Shown: positions 59,623 through 64,000 of the stretch, piece after piece
Position numbering within the stretch: position 1 is the stretch's first letter
How the letters are laid out: each line of letters opens with the position of its first letter
NCBI RefSeq assembly: GCF_000143415.4
Contig: NW_003314286.1
Coordinates: 201,766-265,765, forward strand
Direction: 5' to 3'
Source: Selaginella moellendorffii
Taxonomy: Eukaryota; Plantae; Lycopodiophyta
Length of the DNA: 64,000 nt
Program-made: the position numbers and the translations under genes
The notes under the pieces: generated by a model
Seen by the model: the letters and a program-made list of their open reading frames with translations, nothing else
Told to the model about the DNA's origin: nothing
Databases searched by the model: none

Positions 59623-59833
59623 GTAGCACTACTACTATTCCCTGTTTCATCTTTTTGGAGCTTGAATACCAAAGTTTTTGATTTGCTCAGTGATATCGAG
59701 TAAGATGATCTTCTAGACAAGCTGCCAGACACGAAGAAAGAGAGATCAGAGTTTTAGATCGAGCTCATGTTCTTTCTTACATCGAGAACTGGAAAGCCTG
59801 GAGTTTTCTCGTAAGCGTTTGGGAGAAGTTGGA

Positions 59834-60576
59834 TCATCCGGCGAGAGGATTCGAGTGCATGGTGACTCTGTTTAGCCTGATCTCCGCCAAGGGACGATCT
59901 CCAGCACCCGTTTGTGTCTGTAGCGAAGAAACTGTAAGACCACTATCGATCGAAAGCAAGAAAAGTGTGTTAACCTTCTCCATGAGGTCGAGAACTTCGA
60001 AGCCATGGATGACTTTGCCAAAGACGGTGTAGAGGCCGTTTAAGTGGGGCTGCTTGGCATACGTGACGAAGAACTGGCTCCCATTCGTGTTTGGTCCGCT
60101 GTTGGCCATGGCAAGGATTCCTCTCGCGTTGTGCTGATACAAGAAAGAGAGTAAGAACAATCGCTCAGCTCAATCTTATCATCCAAGGAGAAGAAGAAAG
60201 AAAGAAAGAAGAAAATTTTCTACCTTGAGAGACTCGCGAATCTCATCGTTAAACTTGCGACCCCAAATGCTGGTACCTCCGCGCCCAGTTCCAGTGGGAT
60301 CGCCTCCTTGGATCATGAATCCTTTGATGTTGCGGTGGAAGATTGTGCCGTCGTAGTAGCCGCTCGCGCACAGCGCCAGGAAATTCTACATCTCCAACAT
60401 GAAAATCTTTCAGTCTCTCTCGCGCTCTCTCTTCTAAGATTTTACCTCGGCTGTCTTTGGGACCTCGTCGCAGAAGATCTCGCACTTGATATCTCCCAGA
60501 TTGGTGTGCAATGTGATCGACTACAATGAAACAACAAGATTTCAGCTCCAATCGCAGCAGAGACTCTGCTCACCAT
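59834..60576 (-). CDS. CYP18-1: Cyclophilin PPIL3/CYP18-1
   Basis: M|[25 protein letters not shown]|[30 protein letters not shown]..|[27 protein letters not shown]. First coding exon is ATG only. Confidence 0.95.
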
Positions 60577-60650
60577 CGTCTCCCTCCCAAGAACCCTAGA
60601 CTTGGGTTTTAAGTTAATTCTTTTACACAAAGCTCTTTAAACTTTAAAGA

Positions 60651-63600
60651 CTATGTTGTGGCTTTCTCTCGCAAATAGCTTTCCCAGCCCATGGCTTCCA
60701 ATCTCTCTGCCTTCTCGATCACCTTCCTTTCTAGCTCCTCTTTGTAGGATATCATCCTGGAAGAGAAGAAACGAGATCGTTTTAATGGGTGAAACCATTG
60801 CAAACTCACTTGTCAAGCATTCTCGGGTCCCAAACTTGCAAGAACCTCGCAGCTAAAATCCCTGCGTTTGCTCCATTGTCCACTGCAACCCACGCAACCG
60901 GCTCTGGCTACGATCACACAAAGTGACAGTTGGTCGAGAGCGCATTGATTCTTTCAGCTGAACTGGCAACTTACTTGCACAGCGATTGGAAGTTCGATTC
61001 CATGCTTCGATGAGCCTTTGCTGGTCGGAACCCCGATCACTGGAAGTGGCGTGGCACCGGCAACAATGCCTGCGAAAACAACGAAAATATAAGCATACGA
61101 GTAGAAGATCACCAGGGACTGACCAGGTAACTCGGAGTAGCCGATCGATACGACAACGAGAACTTTGAGACCTTTCGCGTGAGCATCTCTCACATAGTTG
61201 CTGGATACTGCTACGATCTAACCACGCACAAGAATAGAGTTAATGCTTCCATCATATATAACAAAACGATATTTAATACCTCACAAGGCACACCAAACGA
61301 TTCCAGCGCTGCGGCAGCAGCCTTCTCGGGAGTCCCCGCGCAAGTCGTCAAGATTCCCACGACAGGAGGAGCAGCTGCGGAGTTACATTCGCTCGGTAGT
61401 CAATCGTAGAATTAATCACAGTACCAGATTCCTTTGCATTGTACTGCTTTGTGATGTCGCTGCCAACAAACGCTTCCAGCTTTTCCAGACACTGCGATCT
61501 CCTCTCTTCTCCTTGGTGTGCGATAACCCTGTACAAAAACAACGTTTGGAAAAACCAAGAGAACGGAAACACCTCGACGTACTTCGATTGGAGGTGTTCG
61601 TCGGAAGTAGCCAGTATCCTCACGGCCAGAAGTCCTGCGTTCTCTGCATCATCGACGGCTACAGTAGCAACAGGAATTCCCGTTGGCATCTGCCGTGAAA
61701 AGAATTGCCTTCTCTTTCTAACTGCGAAAGGCAAATGGTTTACCTGAGCAATCGACAAGAAGGAATCCAGTCCTCTTAATGCTGTGACATCGACCGGAAC
61801 ACCGATAGCTGGGAGAGGCGTAATGCTGCCAACCATTCCTGAACCAAACCTCGAAAAGTCGAGAGAGAAAACAGAAGAAAAAATTCTACAAAAAGAATTG
61901 ACTAACCGGGAAGGTGCGCAGCACCACCAGCTCCAGCGATAATCACATTGAGATTGTCAAGGTGAGCATTCGATGCGTAGCTATACATTCGTTCCGCGGT
62001 CCTGTGAGCCGAGACAATCGTCATCTACGCACAAACGACTTAGCTAGAAAAACGGCATACTAATTCACAGACCTGGTACTTTACACCAAAAAGATCAAGA
62101 AGTTTTCCGGCGTGTCTCATGGTAGAAAGATCTGAATCCGAACCCATGATAATTCCCACTGCCGGTTTTTCTAGCTTTGAGAAAACTATATATTAAGTGA
62201 AACAGGGAAACGAAAACAAAAAACCGATGTTACCTGTCGGATGTTTGCATTCAGCTTCTGAACCATCCGTGATTTGACGCATTCTTTGTTTCACGGTGGC
62301 CATCGATGGCCCCACAACTGTGACATGACCCATTTTTCGTTGTCTCCGAAACTCTACGCTCAGTGTGAAGCCTAAGTCGCACTACTCAATAATGATAGCA
62401 AACCTCGCTTGTGGTACCAATGTACACTAGCACCTGGAATGCTAAATGCCTTGTTCATTATCTTTTGTGCGATAGATGCACCGAGCTCACCCTGAATGCT
62501 CGCAAACAATGAGCTACAACACGAAGAAATAAGAACGTTACCTCTTCAGCCAAAATGTTATACATTCCTGCTGCTGAAACTTTCATGGAAGTGTCACCGA
62601 GTGGCAAGCCTAGGACAGCACGAAGGTGCTGTTCAAACTGCGAAACGTAGCATGCTTCGATAGTAAGATGGCCACTGTTATGCGGTCGTGGTGCAACCTC
62701 ATTCAGCAAAATCTACAAGAAAAGTTAGAAACAATCAAGAGGCAAAAAATGTATACCAGATTATCAGAAGCCAAAAACTGCTCGACGCAAAAAAACTCCA
62801 GCGCCACCAAATGAAGCGACAGCTTTTGCTGCTAGGTCCAGTGCTGTCTTCTCGGCAGCTTTCGGAATCAGGGCCGGTGATAGCACTGTATGGCAGATGC
62901 TCCTCCTGGACGAATCAGAGAAGTTCTGAATACAAAGGAAAACGAGTAAGCTAGCCTTGCCTTTGAGTAGTCTCCACCAGTTGATAGCACCGTGTTGTTC
63001 CATCTATGCCACGGGCAACCATCACTGCTAGTTCCTAAAAGAATGGATCAGGCAAACGCAGAAAAACTACAAACCTTCTCAAAAGACACCCACTTCTCCG
63101 CAAACAGACCTTGCTCAAAACCTCCCAATGCTGCGGTGACAAGAGAAGAACCACTTAGCGAGCAGTGAACACGGAAGGGCTATCTTACCTTTCACAGACG
63201 GAAGCAAGTCACTTCTGCTTCTCACTGCGATGTTCCCGCGGCCATCGTAAGCAAACCGGCGGCATTTTAGCATGAACGGGTATCCCAGAACAGAAGCTGC
63301 ATCCTCCAAGCTTTCTAAGCCAGTAACCTGTGAACTAATGTCGATCAAACATTTCAAAACTGTAGAGCTCTAGACAAACCTCCACGAACTCAGGAACTGG
63401 AACACCATACTTTATAAAATGCAGCTTCTGGCGATACTTGTCCTGCAAGAAGGAAACAACGATTACCTACATTTGCTCGGAAACTGCTAACCTGAATCGT
63501 CTTAATAGTACTCGAGCTCGGTTCCACGCGAACTCCCTGCTTTTCAAGCTCGTCAAGTGTTCCCGCATCAACATGCTCTATCTCCATAGTCACGACTTCA

Positions 63601-64000
63601 CACCTGAAATGACGAAACGAAGTTTAGCAACGAAAGAACAAGAAAAGCTGGTATACGCTTTGGCGAACTCCAAAACAGCATATCTATCGTCAAACTCCGC
63701 AACAACATGACGATGAGCAAGAGCACTGGCAGGACAAATCGCCGAAGGGTCCAGAACCGCGACTTTGACACCCATCGCCGAGCCAGCTTCGCACAGCATT
63801 CGGCCCAATTGCCCCCCTCCCAGGACTCCCACCACAGCATCGTCTAGCCAAAACCTCCTGCCAGAGCAAATTCTTCTTCTAGAACGAAAGAAAGACTAAG
63901 AGGATTTACCCCGATGAAAGCTGCTGCTGCTGTAAAGCCGCTTCGTTCAGCGCTCTCGCAAAGGAGATCCGAGCGGCAGTGCTCGCCTCGCCGATCCGGA
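60651..64000 (-). CDS. ADE2: Phosphoribosylaminoimidazole (AIR) carboxylase PurK-PurE with an extra degenerate PurE domain; 5' end outside the window
   Basis: [73 protein letters not shown], then a second PurE-like block ending [11 protein letters not shown]. Confidence 0.93.

What the first reader, a model, noticed from the sequence alone, without database searches (positions are those of the whole stretch)
60651..62170. AIR carboxylase with a tandem, catalytically degenerate second PurE domain (PurK-PurE-PurE*)
Seen: after a motif-complete PurE (~62170-61425: [37 protein letters not shown]), the frame does not stop. It splices through a 50-bp GT-AG intron (61424-61375) into five more in-frame exons: [31 protein letters not shown]|[32 protein letters not shown]|[19 protein letters not shown]|[24 protein letters not shown]|[28 protein letters not shown]. 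Intron positions and phases mirror the first PurE. Copy 2 has lost the GSxSD loop, the SAHR catalytic His and GxAAHL, but keeps the structural TPLPVIGVP/NAGxLAxR segments and the canonical GWExYL end, which copy 1 lacks. Established: plant and fungal ADE2 have one PurE; PurE is an octamer with intersubunit active sites. Inference: an internal exon-block duplication was retained without stops, giving a pseudo-enzyme domain that may act as scaffold or regulator (for example a tetramer of PurE-PurE* pairs with half the active sites).
Basis: partly seen in the sequence, partly recalled or inferred. Interest (0 to 1): 0.85.

Follow-up and report, generated by a model that had tools for sequence, protein, structure and literature searches.

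The report
Spikemoss ADE2 with dead second PurE
A spikemoss purine-synthesis gene does splice a working-looking PurE domain and an old, catalytically dead PurE copy into one mRNA, as some methane-making archaea do, but this allele has a one-base frameshift upstream and the plant also keeps a normal copy of the gene.

Summary
On the minus strand, five PurE exons (62185-61425) are followed, across a 50-nt GT-AG intron (61424-61375), by five more in-frame exons (61374-60651). These form a second PurE-like block with the same intron phases. Spliced contigs from four public runs remove every intron as predicted.

The genome is Selaginella moellendorffii. RefSeq already models the other allele as a 771/776-aa PurK-PurE-PurE* protein.

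PurE* lacks the GSxSD, SAHR and GGAAHL motifs and keeps 26 of 57 near-invariant PurE columns. It still scores as PurE and is predicted to keep the fold. It has stayed open despite saturated synonymous divergence from copy 1.

The predicted two-domain model superposes (TM 0.78) on the predicted model of the known double-length PurE-PurE' of Methanobacteria. That is the closest precedent.

Three points temper the finding:
- This window's allele has a T7/T6 frameshift in the PurK part, and the frameshifted form is also seen in RNA contigs.
- One PurK intron is often retained.
- The plant also has a canonical single-PurE paralogue.

Multi-PurE ADE2 also occurs in a moss-like environmental cluster, where both copies are intact, and in a mango gene model.

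Verdict: real, and a new eukaryotic variant of a known kind. Its function is untested.

The parts
62234..63858 (-). PurK part of the gene (preATP-grasp, ATP-grasp, PurK_C), in 11 exons. The 5' end runs off the window. It includes the T7 run and the often-retained intron listed below.
   Evidence: Exon frames match P0001. Joints appear in spliced contigs. Pfam domains were found on the allelic protein. 79 of 82 near-invariant PurK columns are kept.
62789..62795 (-). T7 homopolymer, where the other allele has T6. It shifts the frame in the ATP-grasp exon, giving stop TGA at 62766-62764.
   Evidence: Alignment to L002. ORF ending at 62764. RNA contigs X1 record 3 and X5 record 13 lie on 62757-62904 with no gap.
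62354..62403 (-). 50-nt GT-AG intron. It is retained in the main contigs of three of four runs, and an in-frame stop lies inside it.
   Evidence: Continuous pieces 62234-62490 in X5 and X11, and 62255-62446 in X1. Spliced loose ends appear only in X13. ORF 62372-62509 ends inside it.
62073..62185 (-). PurE1 exon 1, carrying the GSDSD loop. The acceptor is 62185 in RNA. Other acceptors are 62170 (RefSeq X2) and 62174 (frameshifting, seen in X5).
61907..62024 (-). PurE1 exon 2, carrying SAHR and [11 protein letters not shown].
   Evidence: AIRC 50.6 bits. Joints.
61744..61838 (-). PurE1 exon 3, carrying TPLPAIGVP.
   Evidence: AIRC 28.1 bits. Joints.
61583..61689 (-). PurE1 exon 4, carrying QMP...PVATVAV...NAGLLAVR.
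   Evidence: AIRC 45.3 bits. Joints.
61425..61528 (-). PurE1 exon 5. It corresponds to the C-terminal helix exon but is degenerate and now serves as the inter-domain linker. The other allele has a 9-nt in-frame deletion here.
   Evidence: No Pfam hit. z = 1.8 against exon 5'. Deletion at 61444-61452.
61375..61424 (-). 50-nt GT-AG intron joining copy 1 to copy 2.
   Evidence: The joint 61374>61425 is present in all four runs.
61280..61374 (-). PurE* exon 1'. The GSxSD loop is replaced by TTCAGT, with a 2-residue deletion.
61124..61217 (-). PurE* exon 2'. SAHR is lost, with an 8-residue deletion. GGAAHL is replaced by SIGYSEL.
60975..61069 (-). PurE* exon 3'. TPLPVIGVP is kept. The SLLSIVQMP loop is degraded and has low pLDDT.
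   Evidence: AIRC 18 bits at profile positions 71-91..
60810..60907 (-). PurE* exon 4', carrying PVAWVAVD...NAGILAAR.
   Evidence: AIRC 20.7 bits at profile positions 107-134. z = 9.8.
60651..60756 (-). PurE* exon 5'. It holds the canonical PurE C-terminal helices ending in GWESYL, followed by stop TAG.

Best explanation
The window holds one allele of a fast-evolving Selaginella moellendorffii paralogue of plant ADE2 (PurK fused to class I PurE). In this gene the five-exon PurE block was duplicated in tandem long ago.

The two copies then decayed in complementary ways. The upstream copy kept every catalytic loop, while its last exon became a linker. The downstream copy (PurE*) lost the phosphate loop, the catalytic His loop and the class I GGAAHL loop, but kept the core of the fold and the canonical C-terminal helices.

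Shown here:
- One spliced mRNA carries both copies.
- The catalytic motifs of PurE* are lost.
- A PurE fold is predicted for PurE*.
- The PurE* frame has stayed open under weak purifying selection.

Inferred:
- PurE* is a catalytically dead structural partner that packs against PurE1 as a neighbouring protomer would.
- Four chains would then build a PurE-type ring of eight domains with only four catalytic centres. This is the role proposed for the PurE' half of the methanobacterial double-length PurE.
- The window's own allele is probably a null for the full-length protein, because a T7/T6 frameshift stops translation inside PurK. The allele on GL377568.1 is intact.
For: Splicing: every predicted joint is present in contigs of four runs.

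Identity: the only hit among 1.84 billion representatives for exons 2'+3' is XP_024524038.1 of S. moellendorffii. Its locus is 97.9% identical to the window and has the same downstream neighbour.

PurE* derives from PurE. It scores 120 bits against a plant PurE profile, against 236 for copy 1. It is 40-45% identical to genuine PurEs.

PurE* is catalytically dead. It keeps 26 of 57 near-invariant columns and all three catalytic motifs are absent.

The fold is predicted to be kept. The AF2 model of PurE* alone has pLDDT 84, and its Foldseek hits to PurE structures reach E = 3e-12 with probability 1.0.

Domain pairing: the tandem model has pLDDT 85 and pTM 0.86. It superposes on the ESM-Atlas model of a 335-aa Methanobacteriota double PurE with TM 0.78 over 286 residues.

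Constraint: the allele-to-allele pN/pS is 0.35 for PurE*, 0.10 for PurE1 and 0.24 for PurK. Synonymous divergence between the copies is saturated (dS about 1.8). Only 0.8% of neutral simulations at that divergence stay stop-free.

PurK looks catalytically intact, keeping 79 of 82 near-invariant columns.

Background: PurE is an octamer whose active sites sit where three protomers meet (PMC10484210). The precedent and the structural-role idea for PurE-PurE' come from PMC3261824.
Against: - No protein-level evidence exists.
- The window allele is frameshifted and its RNA carries the frameshift.
- One PurK intron with an internal stop is retained in the main contigs of three runs.
- A canonical paralogue could cover the housekeeping function.
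- PurE1 itself has lost 9 of 57 near-invariant columns and sits on a long branch.
- The pN/pS test for PurE* alone is not significant (p = 0.06).
- Both superposed structures are predictions.
- No orthologue from another species was found, so long-term retention across species is not shown.
Confidence: 0.55

Rival explanations
1. This is a decaying, redundant paralogue. The whole gene is drifting towards a pseudogene because the canonical ADE2 paralogue does the work. On this reading PurE* is a relic with no role of its own.
For: - The window allele has a T7 frameshift that is also present in RNA.
- An intron with an internal stop is retained, and a frameshifting alternative acceptor is used.
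- Branches are long: PurE1 2.5 and PurE* 6.4, against a median of 0.35.
- Only one haplotype has annotated proteins for this gene, while the canonical paralogue has them from two scaffolds.
- PurE* shows a higher pN/pS than PurE1.
Against: - pN/pS is well below 1 in PurK (0.24, p = 0.005) and in PurE1 (0.10, p = 0.001).
- PurK keeps 79 of 82 near-invariant columns.
- The 731 window codons examined are otherwise free of stops.
- PurE* has stayed open and its four introns have stayed spliceable despite saturated divergence.
Confidence: 0.2
2. PurE* is an in-frame spacer only. Selection acts on the canonical C-terminal helices in exon 5', which serve the catalytic PurE1. PurE* must merely stay open and spliceable so that those helices are translated.
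For: - Copy 1 has lost the GWxxY tail and copy 2 keeps it.
- The open frame is maintained while residue-level constraint is weak.
Against: - PurE* keeps core motifs of the fold (PxIGVP, NAGxLAxR).
- It is predicted with high confidence to fold as PurE and to pack against PurE1.
- A simple deletion joining exon 4 to exon 5' would be in frame, as in the old JGI model P0033. Such a deletion has not occurred.
Confidence: 0.15
3. The PurE* exons are cassette exons. The productive mRNA skips exon 5 to exon 4' and encodes a canonical single-PurE ADE2. The long form would then be a minor or regulatory isoform.
For: - Exon 4 and exon 5' have compatible phase.
- GenBank EFJ35501.1 (P0033) is modelled exactly this way.
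Against: - All four runs' contigs carry the long form.
- The joints listed and the four not shown are all accounted for by constitutive introns.
- The JGI model may be driven by homology only. Contigs can hide rare forms, so the skipped form is not excluded.
Confidence: 0.07
4. The tandem is an assembly or annotation artefact.
For: None found.
Against: - Two independent genome sequences carry it, the window and GL377568.1.
- Spliced RNA contigs from four studies carry it.
Confidence: 0.01

Closest known systems
Double-length PurE-PurE' of Methanobacteria (M. smithii, M. thermautotrophicus and others), described in PMC3261824
   Same: Both have two PurE-like domains in one chain, with the first class I-like and the second more divergent. 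A structural role in assembly has been proposed for the second domain. The predicted two-domain arrangement superposes with TM 0.78 over 286 residues, and it is the nearest look-alike by language-model features.
   Different: The archaeal protein has no PurK. It complements both purE and purK mutants, and its second half is required for that (paper's statement). Here the tandem is fused behind PurK in a eukaryotic gene with introns, and it arose by duplication of an exon block. Origin is almost certainly independent. I did not examine the motif state of the archaeal PurE'.
Canonical plant and fungal ADE2 (PurK-PurE), including the S. moellendorffii paralogue SELMODRAFT_121407 (P0054)
   Same: Both share the PurK domains and a class I PurE with all motifs. 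PurE1, PurE* and P0054 share the rare VAVD residues.
   Different: Canonical proteins have one PurE with its own GWxxY tail. All 148 other ADE2-like or PurE-bearing proteins scanned have a single PurE domain. P0054 keeps 54 of 57 near-invariant PurE columns, against 48 for PurE1 and 26 for PurE*.
Moss-like environmental ADE2 cluster P0035 (nine members from ENA, JGI and Logan; P0279 is the longest member, 894 aa)
   Same: It is PurK followed by two PurE domains in one open frame. It sits next to Physcomitrium in the PurE tree.
   Different: Both copies are motif-complete and nearly identical to each other, so the duplication is recent and there is no pseudo-enzyme.
Mangifera indica XP_044482131.1 (P0034, 1071 aa, RefSeq model)
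   Same: It is PurK followed by several PurE blocks, some with degraded catalytic motifs.
   Different: It has three blocks, and the degraded ones come first. It is a computational model only and I did not check it against RNA.
Human PAICS (class II PurE fused to PurC)
   Same: A PurE octamer core carries a fused partner enzyme (PMC10484210).
   Different: It differs in PurE class and in fusion partner, and it has a single PurE domain.

Membership tests
Class I PurE (N5-CAIR mutase, Pfam AIRC PF00731) | Profile match to AIRC and a PurE fold | tested here: met
   PurE1 exons score 28-51 bits each, and PurE* exons 3' and 4' score 18 and 21 bits. There are two AIRC stretches on P0001. A plant PurE profile gives 236 and 120 bits. 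Foldseek hits to PurE structures have probability 1.0 for both.
Class I PurE (N5-CAIR mutase, Pfam AIRC PF00731) | Phosphate-binding GSxSD loop | tested here: not met
   PurE1 has GSDSD. PurE* has TTCAGT with a 2-residue deletion. The feature is therefore met for copy 1 and not met for copy 2.
Class I PurE (N5-CAIR mutase, Pfam AIRC PF00731) | Catalytic His in SAHR | tested here: not met
   PurE1 has SAHRT. PurE* has VSSN followed by an 8-residue deletion. The feature is not met for copy 2.
Class I PurE (N5-CAIR mutase, Pfam AIRC PF00731) | Class I signature G(G/M)AAHL | tested here: not met
   PurE1 has [11 protein letters not shown]. PurE* has [11 protein letters not shown]. The feature is not met for copy 2.
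Class I PurE (N5-CAIR mutase, Pfam AIRC PF00731) | Octamer with 422 symmetry | not testable with these tools
   Only single-chain predictions were possible. The octamer is taken from PMC10484210.
Plant/fungal ADE2 (PurK-PurE fusion) | preATP-grasp, ATP-grasp and PurK_C domains followed by AIRC in one chain | tested here: met
   All four domains are found on the allelic protein P0001, and the window exons match it.
Plant/fungal ADE2 (PurK-PurE fusion) | Uninterrupted reading frame in this window | tested here: not met
   The T7 run at 62789-62795 shifts the frame, giving a stop at 62766-62764. RNA contigs carry T7.
Methanobacterial PurE-PurE' | Two PurE-like domains in one chain, the second more divergent | tested here: met
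Methanobacterial PurE-PurE' | Same relative arrangement of the two domains | tested here: met
   TM is 0.78/0.79 over 286 residues at rmsd 2.3, comparing a predicted model with a predicted model.
Methanobacterial PurE-PurE' | Stand-alone protein in an organism without PurK | tested here: not met
   Here the tandem is fused behind PurK.
Methanobacterial PurE-PurE' | Common descent of the duplication | tested here: inconclusive
   PurE* sits on a branch of length 6.4 and its placement is unreliable. A PurE1+PurE* clade is not rejected (p-AU 0.147). The shared introns and the Selaginella-only VAVD residues point to an origin within the lineage. No archaeal sequence was in the tree.

The most novel reading that the evidence does not exclude
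PurE* is an obligate dead partner that turns the PurE octamer into a ring of four PurE/PurE* pairs with half the active sites. It would have been reached independently of the methanobacterial PurE-PurE'. The moss-like tandem with two intact copies and the mango array would represent earlier stages of the same path. The single-chain PurM-PurM noted elsewhere in this genome acts at the step just before PurK and PurE. Together these would point to a lineage-wide shift of consecutive purine enzymes towards fused pseudo-dimers.
Probability: 0.3. Interest if true: 0.65.

Novelty: new variant of a known kind. Interest (0 to 1): 0.45.

Why it matters
The role of the divergent second half of the archaeal double-length PurE is still described as unresolved in the 2011 archaeal review (PMC3261824). 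An independent eukaryotic case would give a comparative handle on how a homo-octameric enzyme tolerates or exploits dead subunits. The case has a clearly dead second domain, complementary decay of the two tails, and related 'early-stage' tandems in other plants. It is also a clean example of intragenic exon-block duplication followed by partition of structural and catalytic roles within one chain. Its weight is limited for now. The gene has a canonical paralogue, the allele in this window is frameshifted, and nothing is known at the protein level.

Tried and rejected
- The first paper search matched 'pure' and 'Purkinje' and was useless. Later searches found no paper on a plant double PurE.
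- Pfam on single exons gave nothing for exons 1', 2', 5 and 5'. A weak KNOX2 hit on exon 5' (E = 0.16) is noise.
- The exact-sequence lookup for P0001 found no locus, but the lookup for isoform X1 did.
- The exact lookup of the ORF that would start at the internal Met (P0001:407-771) was not in the collection.
- The tree could not place PurE*. Its grouping with chlorophytes looks like long-branch attraction and I rejected it as evidence of origin.
- Searches for PurE* relatives covered lengths of 95-301 and 424-1349 aa. The 302-423 aa range was not searched.
- No other lycophyte ADE2 appeared among the hits. The absence of PurE* orthologues therefore says little about its age.
- I considered ribosomal or transcriptional slippage on the U7 run as a rescue of the frameshift and set it aside. 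It would need a +1 shift and nothing supports it.
- The alignment built for the tandem fold (A1) was ragged at 741 columns. The second half of that model therefore rests on few rows, and the separate PurE* model (A2) was made to compensate.
Full report
**What is in the sequence**

The gene lies on the minus strand. I re-derived all exons from the sequence.

Copy 1 of PurE is made of five exons:
- 62185/62170-62073
- 62024-61907
- 61838-61744
- 61689-61583
- 61528-61425

A 50-nt GT-AG intron (61424-61375) follows. After it come five further exons:
- 61374-61280
- 61217-61124
- 61069-60975
- 60907-60810
- 60756-60654, with stop TAG at 60653-60651

The intron phases 0, 1, 0, 2 are the same in both blocks, and every intron has GT..AG ends. 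The 335 codons of the PurE region contain one stop, the terminal one. If the bridging intron were retained, the frame would stop at 61350-61348.

Pfam AIRC matches copy-1 exons 1-4 at 28-51 bits. It matches copy-2 exons 3' and 4' at 18 and 21 bits, at the corresponding profile positions. Exon-by-exon alignment of the two copies scores z = 5.4-9.8 above shuffles for exons 1-4, but only 1.8 for exon 5.

**RNA evidence**

Contigs from four public runs were laid on 60600-63900. The runs come from four studies and carry three coded organism labels. Their library type is not on record, but the contigs are spliced, so they derive from RNA.

All four runs show the joint 61374>61425 and every other predicted joint in the PurE-PurE* region. 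One 3158-nt contig runs from PurK through to the end of PurE*.

One correction is needed. The acceptor of the first PurE exon in the contigs is 62185, which adds five residues as in RefSeq isoform X1. It is not 62170. One run also shows a frameshifting acceptor at 62174.

**Identity**

I searched the read-through of exons 2' and 3' against 1.84 billion cluster representatives. The single hit was P0001. This is XP_024524038.1, 'phosphoribosylaminoimidazole carboxylase, chloroplastic isoform X2' of Selaginella moellendorffii, 771 aa. Isoform X1 has 776 aa.

Pfam finds preATP-grasp, ATP-grasp, PurK_C and two AIRC stretches on it. Its locus on GL377568.1 (L002) is 97.9% identical to the window over 3462 aligned bases. 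It has the same cyclophilin gene downstream. The window is therefore the other allele or haplotype.

The older GenBank model EFJ35501.1 (P0033) joins exon 4 directly to exon 5'. It omits the linker exon and exons 1'-4'.

The same genome has a canonical paralogue, SELMODRAFT_121407 (P0054). It has one motif-complete PurE.

**Nature of PurE***

- Against a profile built from ten canonical plant, algal, fungal and bacterial PurE regions, PurE1 scores 236 bits and PurE* 120 bits.
- 57 columns are at least 95% conserved in 140 single-PurE sequences. P0054 keeps 54 of them, PurE1 keeps 48 and PurE* keeps 26.
- PurE* lacks GSxSD, SAHR and GGAAHL, with deletions of 2, 8 and 4 residues. It keeps PxIGVP, NAGxLAxR and the GWxxY tail. 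PurE1 has all catalytic motifs but no GWxxY.
- The AlphaFold2 model of PurE* alone has pLDDT 84. Foldseek returns PurE crystal structures at E = 3e-12 with probability 1.0.
- The two-domain model has pLDDT 85 and pTM 0.86. Confidence is low only in the linker and in the degraded loop.

**Selection and age**

Between the two alleles, pN/pS differs by region:

| Region | pN/pS | Note |
|---|---|---|
| PurK | 0.24 | binomial p = 0.005 |
| PurE1 core | 0.10 | binomial p = 0.001 |
| PurE* | 0.35 | 6 nonsynonymous against 6 synonymous, binomial p = 0.06 |
| Last exon (5') | 0.45 | |
| PurE* plus last exon | not computed | p = 0.049 |

Copy 1 and copy 2 are 37% identical in protein and 49% in DNA. 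Their synonymous sites are saturated (dS about 1.8), so the duplication is old. In neutral simulations at that divergence, only 0.8% of sequences stay free of stops, and this ignores indels and splice sites. The frame of PurE* has therefore been kept by selection. Residue-level constraint is weaker than in PurE1.

A third genotype (run X13) also has PurE* open.

In the PurE tree PurE* has a branch length of 6.4 and PurE1 2.5, against a median of 0.35. The placement of PurE* is unreliable. A PurE1+PurE* clade is not rejected (p-AU 0.147). PurE1, PurE* and P0054 share the VAVD residues, and that Asp occurs in only 2.9% of other sequences. This points to an origin within the Selaginella lineage.

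**Distribution**

I searched both PurE halves against 5.8 billion proteins of 424-1349 aa, which gave 3344 hits. Only two other entries cover both halves:
- P0035, a moss-like environmental protein.
- P0034, a Mangifera indica RefSeq model.

All other plants cover about half of the query. These include Marchantia, Physcomitrium, Adiantum, Ceratopteris and many angiosperms.

The P0035 cluster has nine members from ENA, JGI and Logan. All have two motif-complete PurE domains. The mango model has three blocks, and the first two have degraded motifs.

Searches with PurE* alone found nothing closer than 45% identity. No other lycophyte ADE2 turned up at all. The absence of orthologues is therefore uninformative.

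Outside plants, the four Methanobacteria studied by Brown et al. have a fused purE-purE' gene whose second half is less similar to known PurEs. That half is required for complementation of E. coli mutants. It was suggested to be either catalytic or structural (PMC3261824).

The Selaginella tandem model superposes on the ESM-Atlas model of a 335-aa Methanobacteriota double PurE with TM 0.78 over 286 residues. These archaeal clusters are also the nearest by language-model features, at a score of 0.84, which is a lead only.

**Problems of this allele and of the transcripts**

The window has T7 at 62789-62795 where L002 has T6. This breaks the frame between two conserved stretches of the ATP-grasp domain and gives a stop at 62766-62764.

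Two RNA contigs from different studies lie on that exon without a gap and with window-type substitutions. The frameshifted allele is therefore real and transcribed. A third contig appears to have T7 too, judged by its length, which is weaker evidence.

Annotated proteins for this gene come from one scaffold only. The canonical paralogue has them from two scaffolds. This fits a broken second haplotype but does not prove it.

Separately, the 50-nt intron 62354-62403 has an in-frame stop. It is retained in the main contigs of three of the four runs, and it is seen spliced only in the fourth.

On the intact allele PurK keeps 79 of 82 near-invariant columns. The gene as such still looks like an enzyme.

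**Mechanism**

PurE is an octamer with 422 symmetry. Its active sites lie where three protomers meet, and substrate contacts come mostly from one chain (PMC10484210).

The best-supported reading is that PurE* is a dead protomer. It would pack against PurE1 in the position of a neighbouring subunit and supply the C-terminal helices that copy 1 lost. Four chains would then make an eight-domain ring with four catalytic centres. This is inference from motif loss, predicted fold, predicted domain pairing and the archaeal analogue.

The rivals are:
- a decaying redundant paralogue;
- a spacer kept open only so that exon 5' is translated;
- a cassette of exons that the productive mRNA skips.

None of these is excluded. 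The first is favoured by the frameshift and the noisy splicing. It is opposed by the purifying selection on PurK and PurE1 and by the old but still open PurE*.

**Verdict**

The architecture is already in RefSeq as a model, has an archaeal precedent and has independent plant parallels. It is therefore a new eukaryotic variant of a known kind rather than a new kind.

Exons were searched by reference, and the public protein of the other allele stood in for the whole. Joining across exons was done only inside scripts, to keep codon register when counting substitutions.

Only one reads call was allowed, and it returned contigs. Isoform ratios and allele ratios could therefore not be measured.

Earlier notes of this scan (s1-392232, s1-421932) named the species, which I confirmed. 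They also report a single-chain PurM-PurM in the same genome, which I did not test.

Noticed in passing
window 62789-62795: A T7 run where the other allele has T6 frameshifts the PurK ATP-grasp exon, giving a stop at 62766-62764. RNA contigs of two studies carry T7.
   Followed up: partly
window 62354-62403: A 50-nt intron with an in-frame stop is retained in the main contigs of three of four runs. An ATG at 62333 opens a frame that would run through PurE and PurE*.
   Followed up: partly
window 62170-62185: There are three acceptors for the first PurE exon. 62185 is seen in RNA and matches isoform X1. 62174 is seen in run X5 and is out of frame.
   Followed up: partly
window 62906-62960 and 63035-63074: A GC-AG intron of 55 nt is spliced in all four runs. 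A very short 40-nt GT-AG intron is inferred from the match to P0001 and from contig lengths.
   Followed up: partly
window 62905-63188: Contig X1 record 3 holds about 10 fewer letters between its pieces at 62904 and 63189 than the exons predict. It may reflect an alternative splice site and remains unexplained.
   Followed up: no
L001 1909-4068: A moss-like ADE2 with two motif-complete, nearly identical PurE domains sits in one intron-free open frame on an ENA metagenome contig.
   Followed up: partly
P0034 (Mangifera indica XP_044482131.1): A RefSeq model of 1071 aa has PurK followed by three PurE blocks. The first two have degraded GSxSD, SAHR and GGAAHL motifs. I did not check it against RNA.
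   Followed up: partly
window 59830-60580: A cyclophilin-type peptidyl-prolyl isomerase gene lies directly downstream on the same strand. One RNA contig (X1 record 1) runs on some 800 letters below 60600, towards this gene.
   Followed up: no
L003 2001-4587: This is the canonical single-PurE ADE2 paralogue of S. moellendorffii on GL377630.1, with an allelic copy on a 981,669-base scaffold. It is 61% identical to P0001 in PurK and closer to other land plants than P0001 is.
   Followed up: partly
same genome, other windows (earlier notes s1-392232, s1-421932): A single-chain PurM-PurM with complementary motif loss is reported in the same genome. PurM acts at the step just before PurK and PurE.
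   Followed up: no
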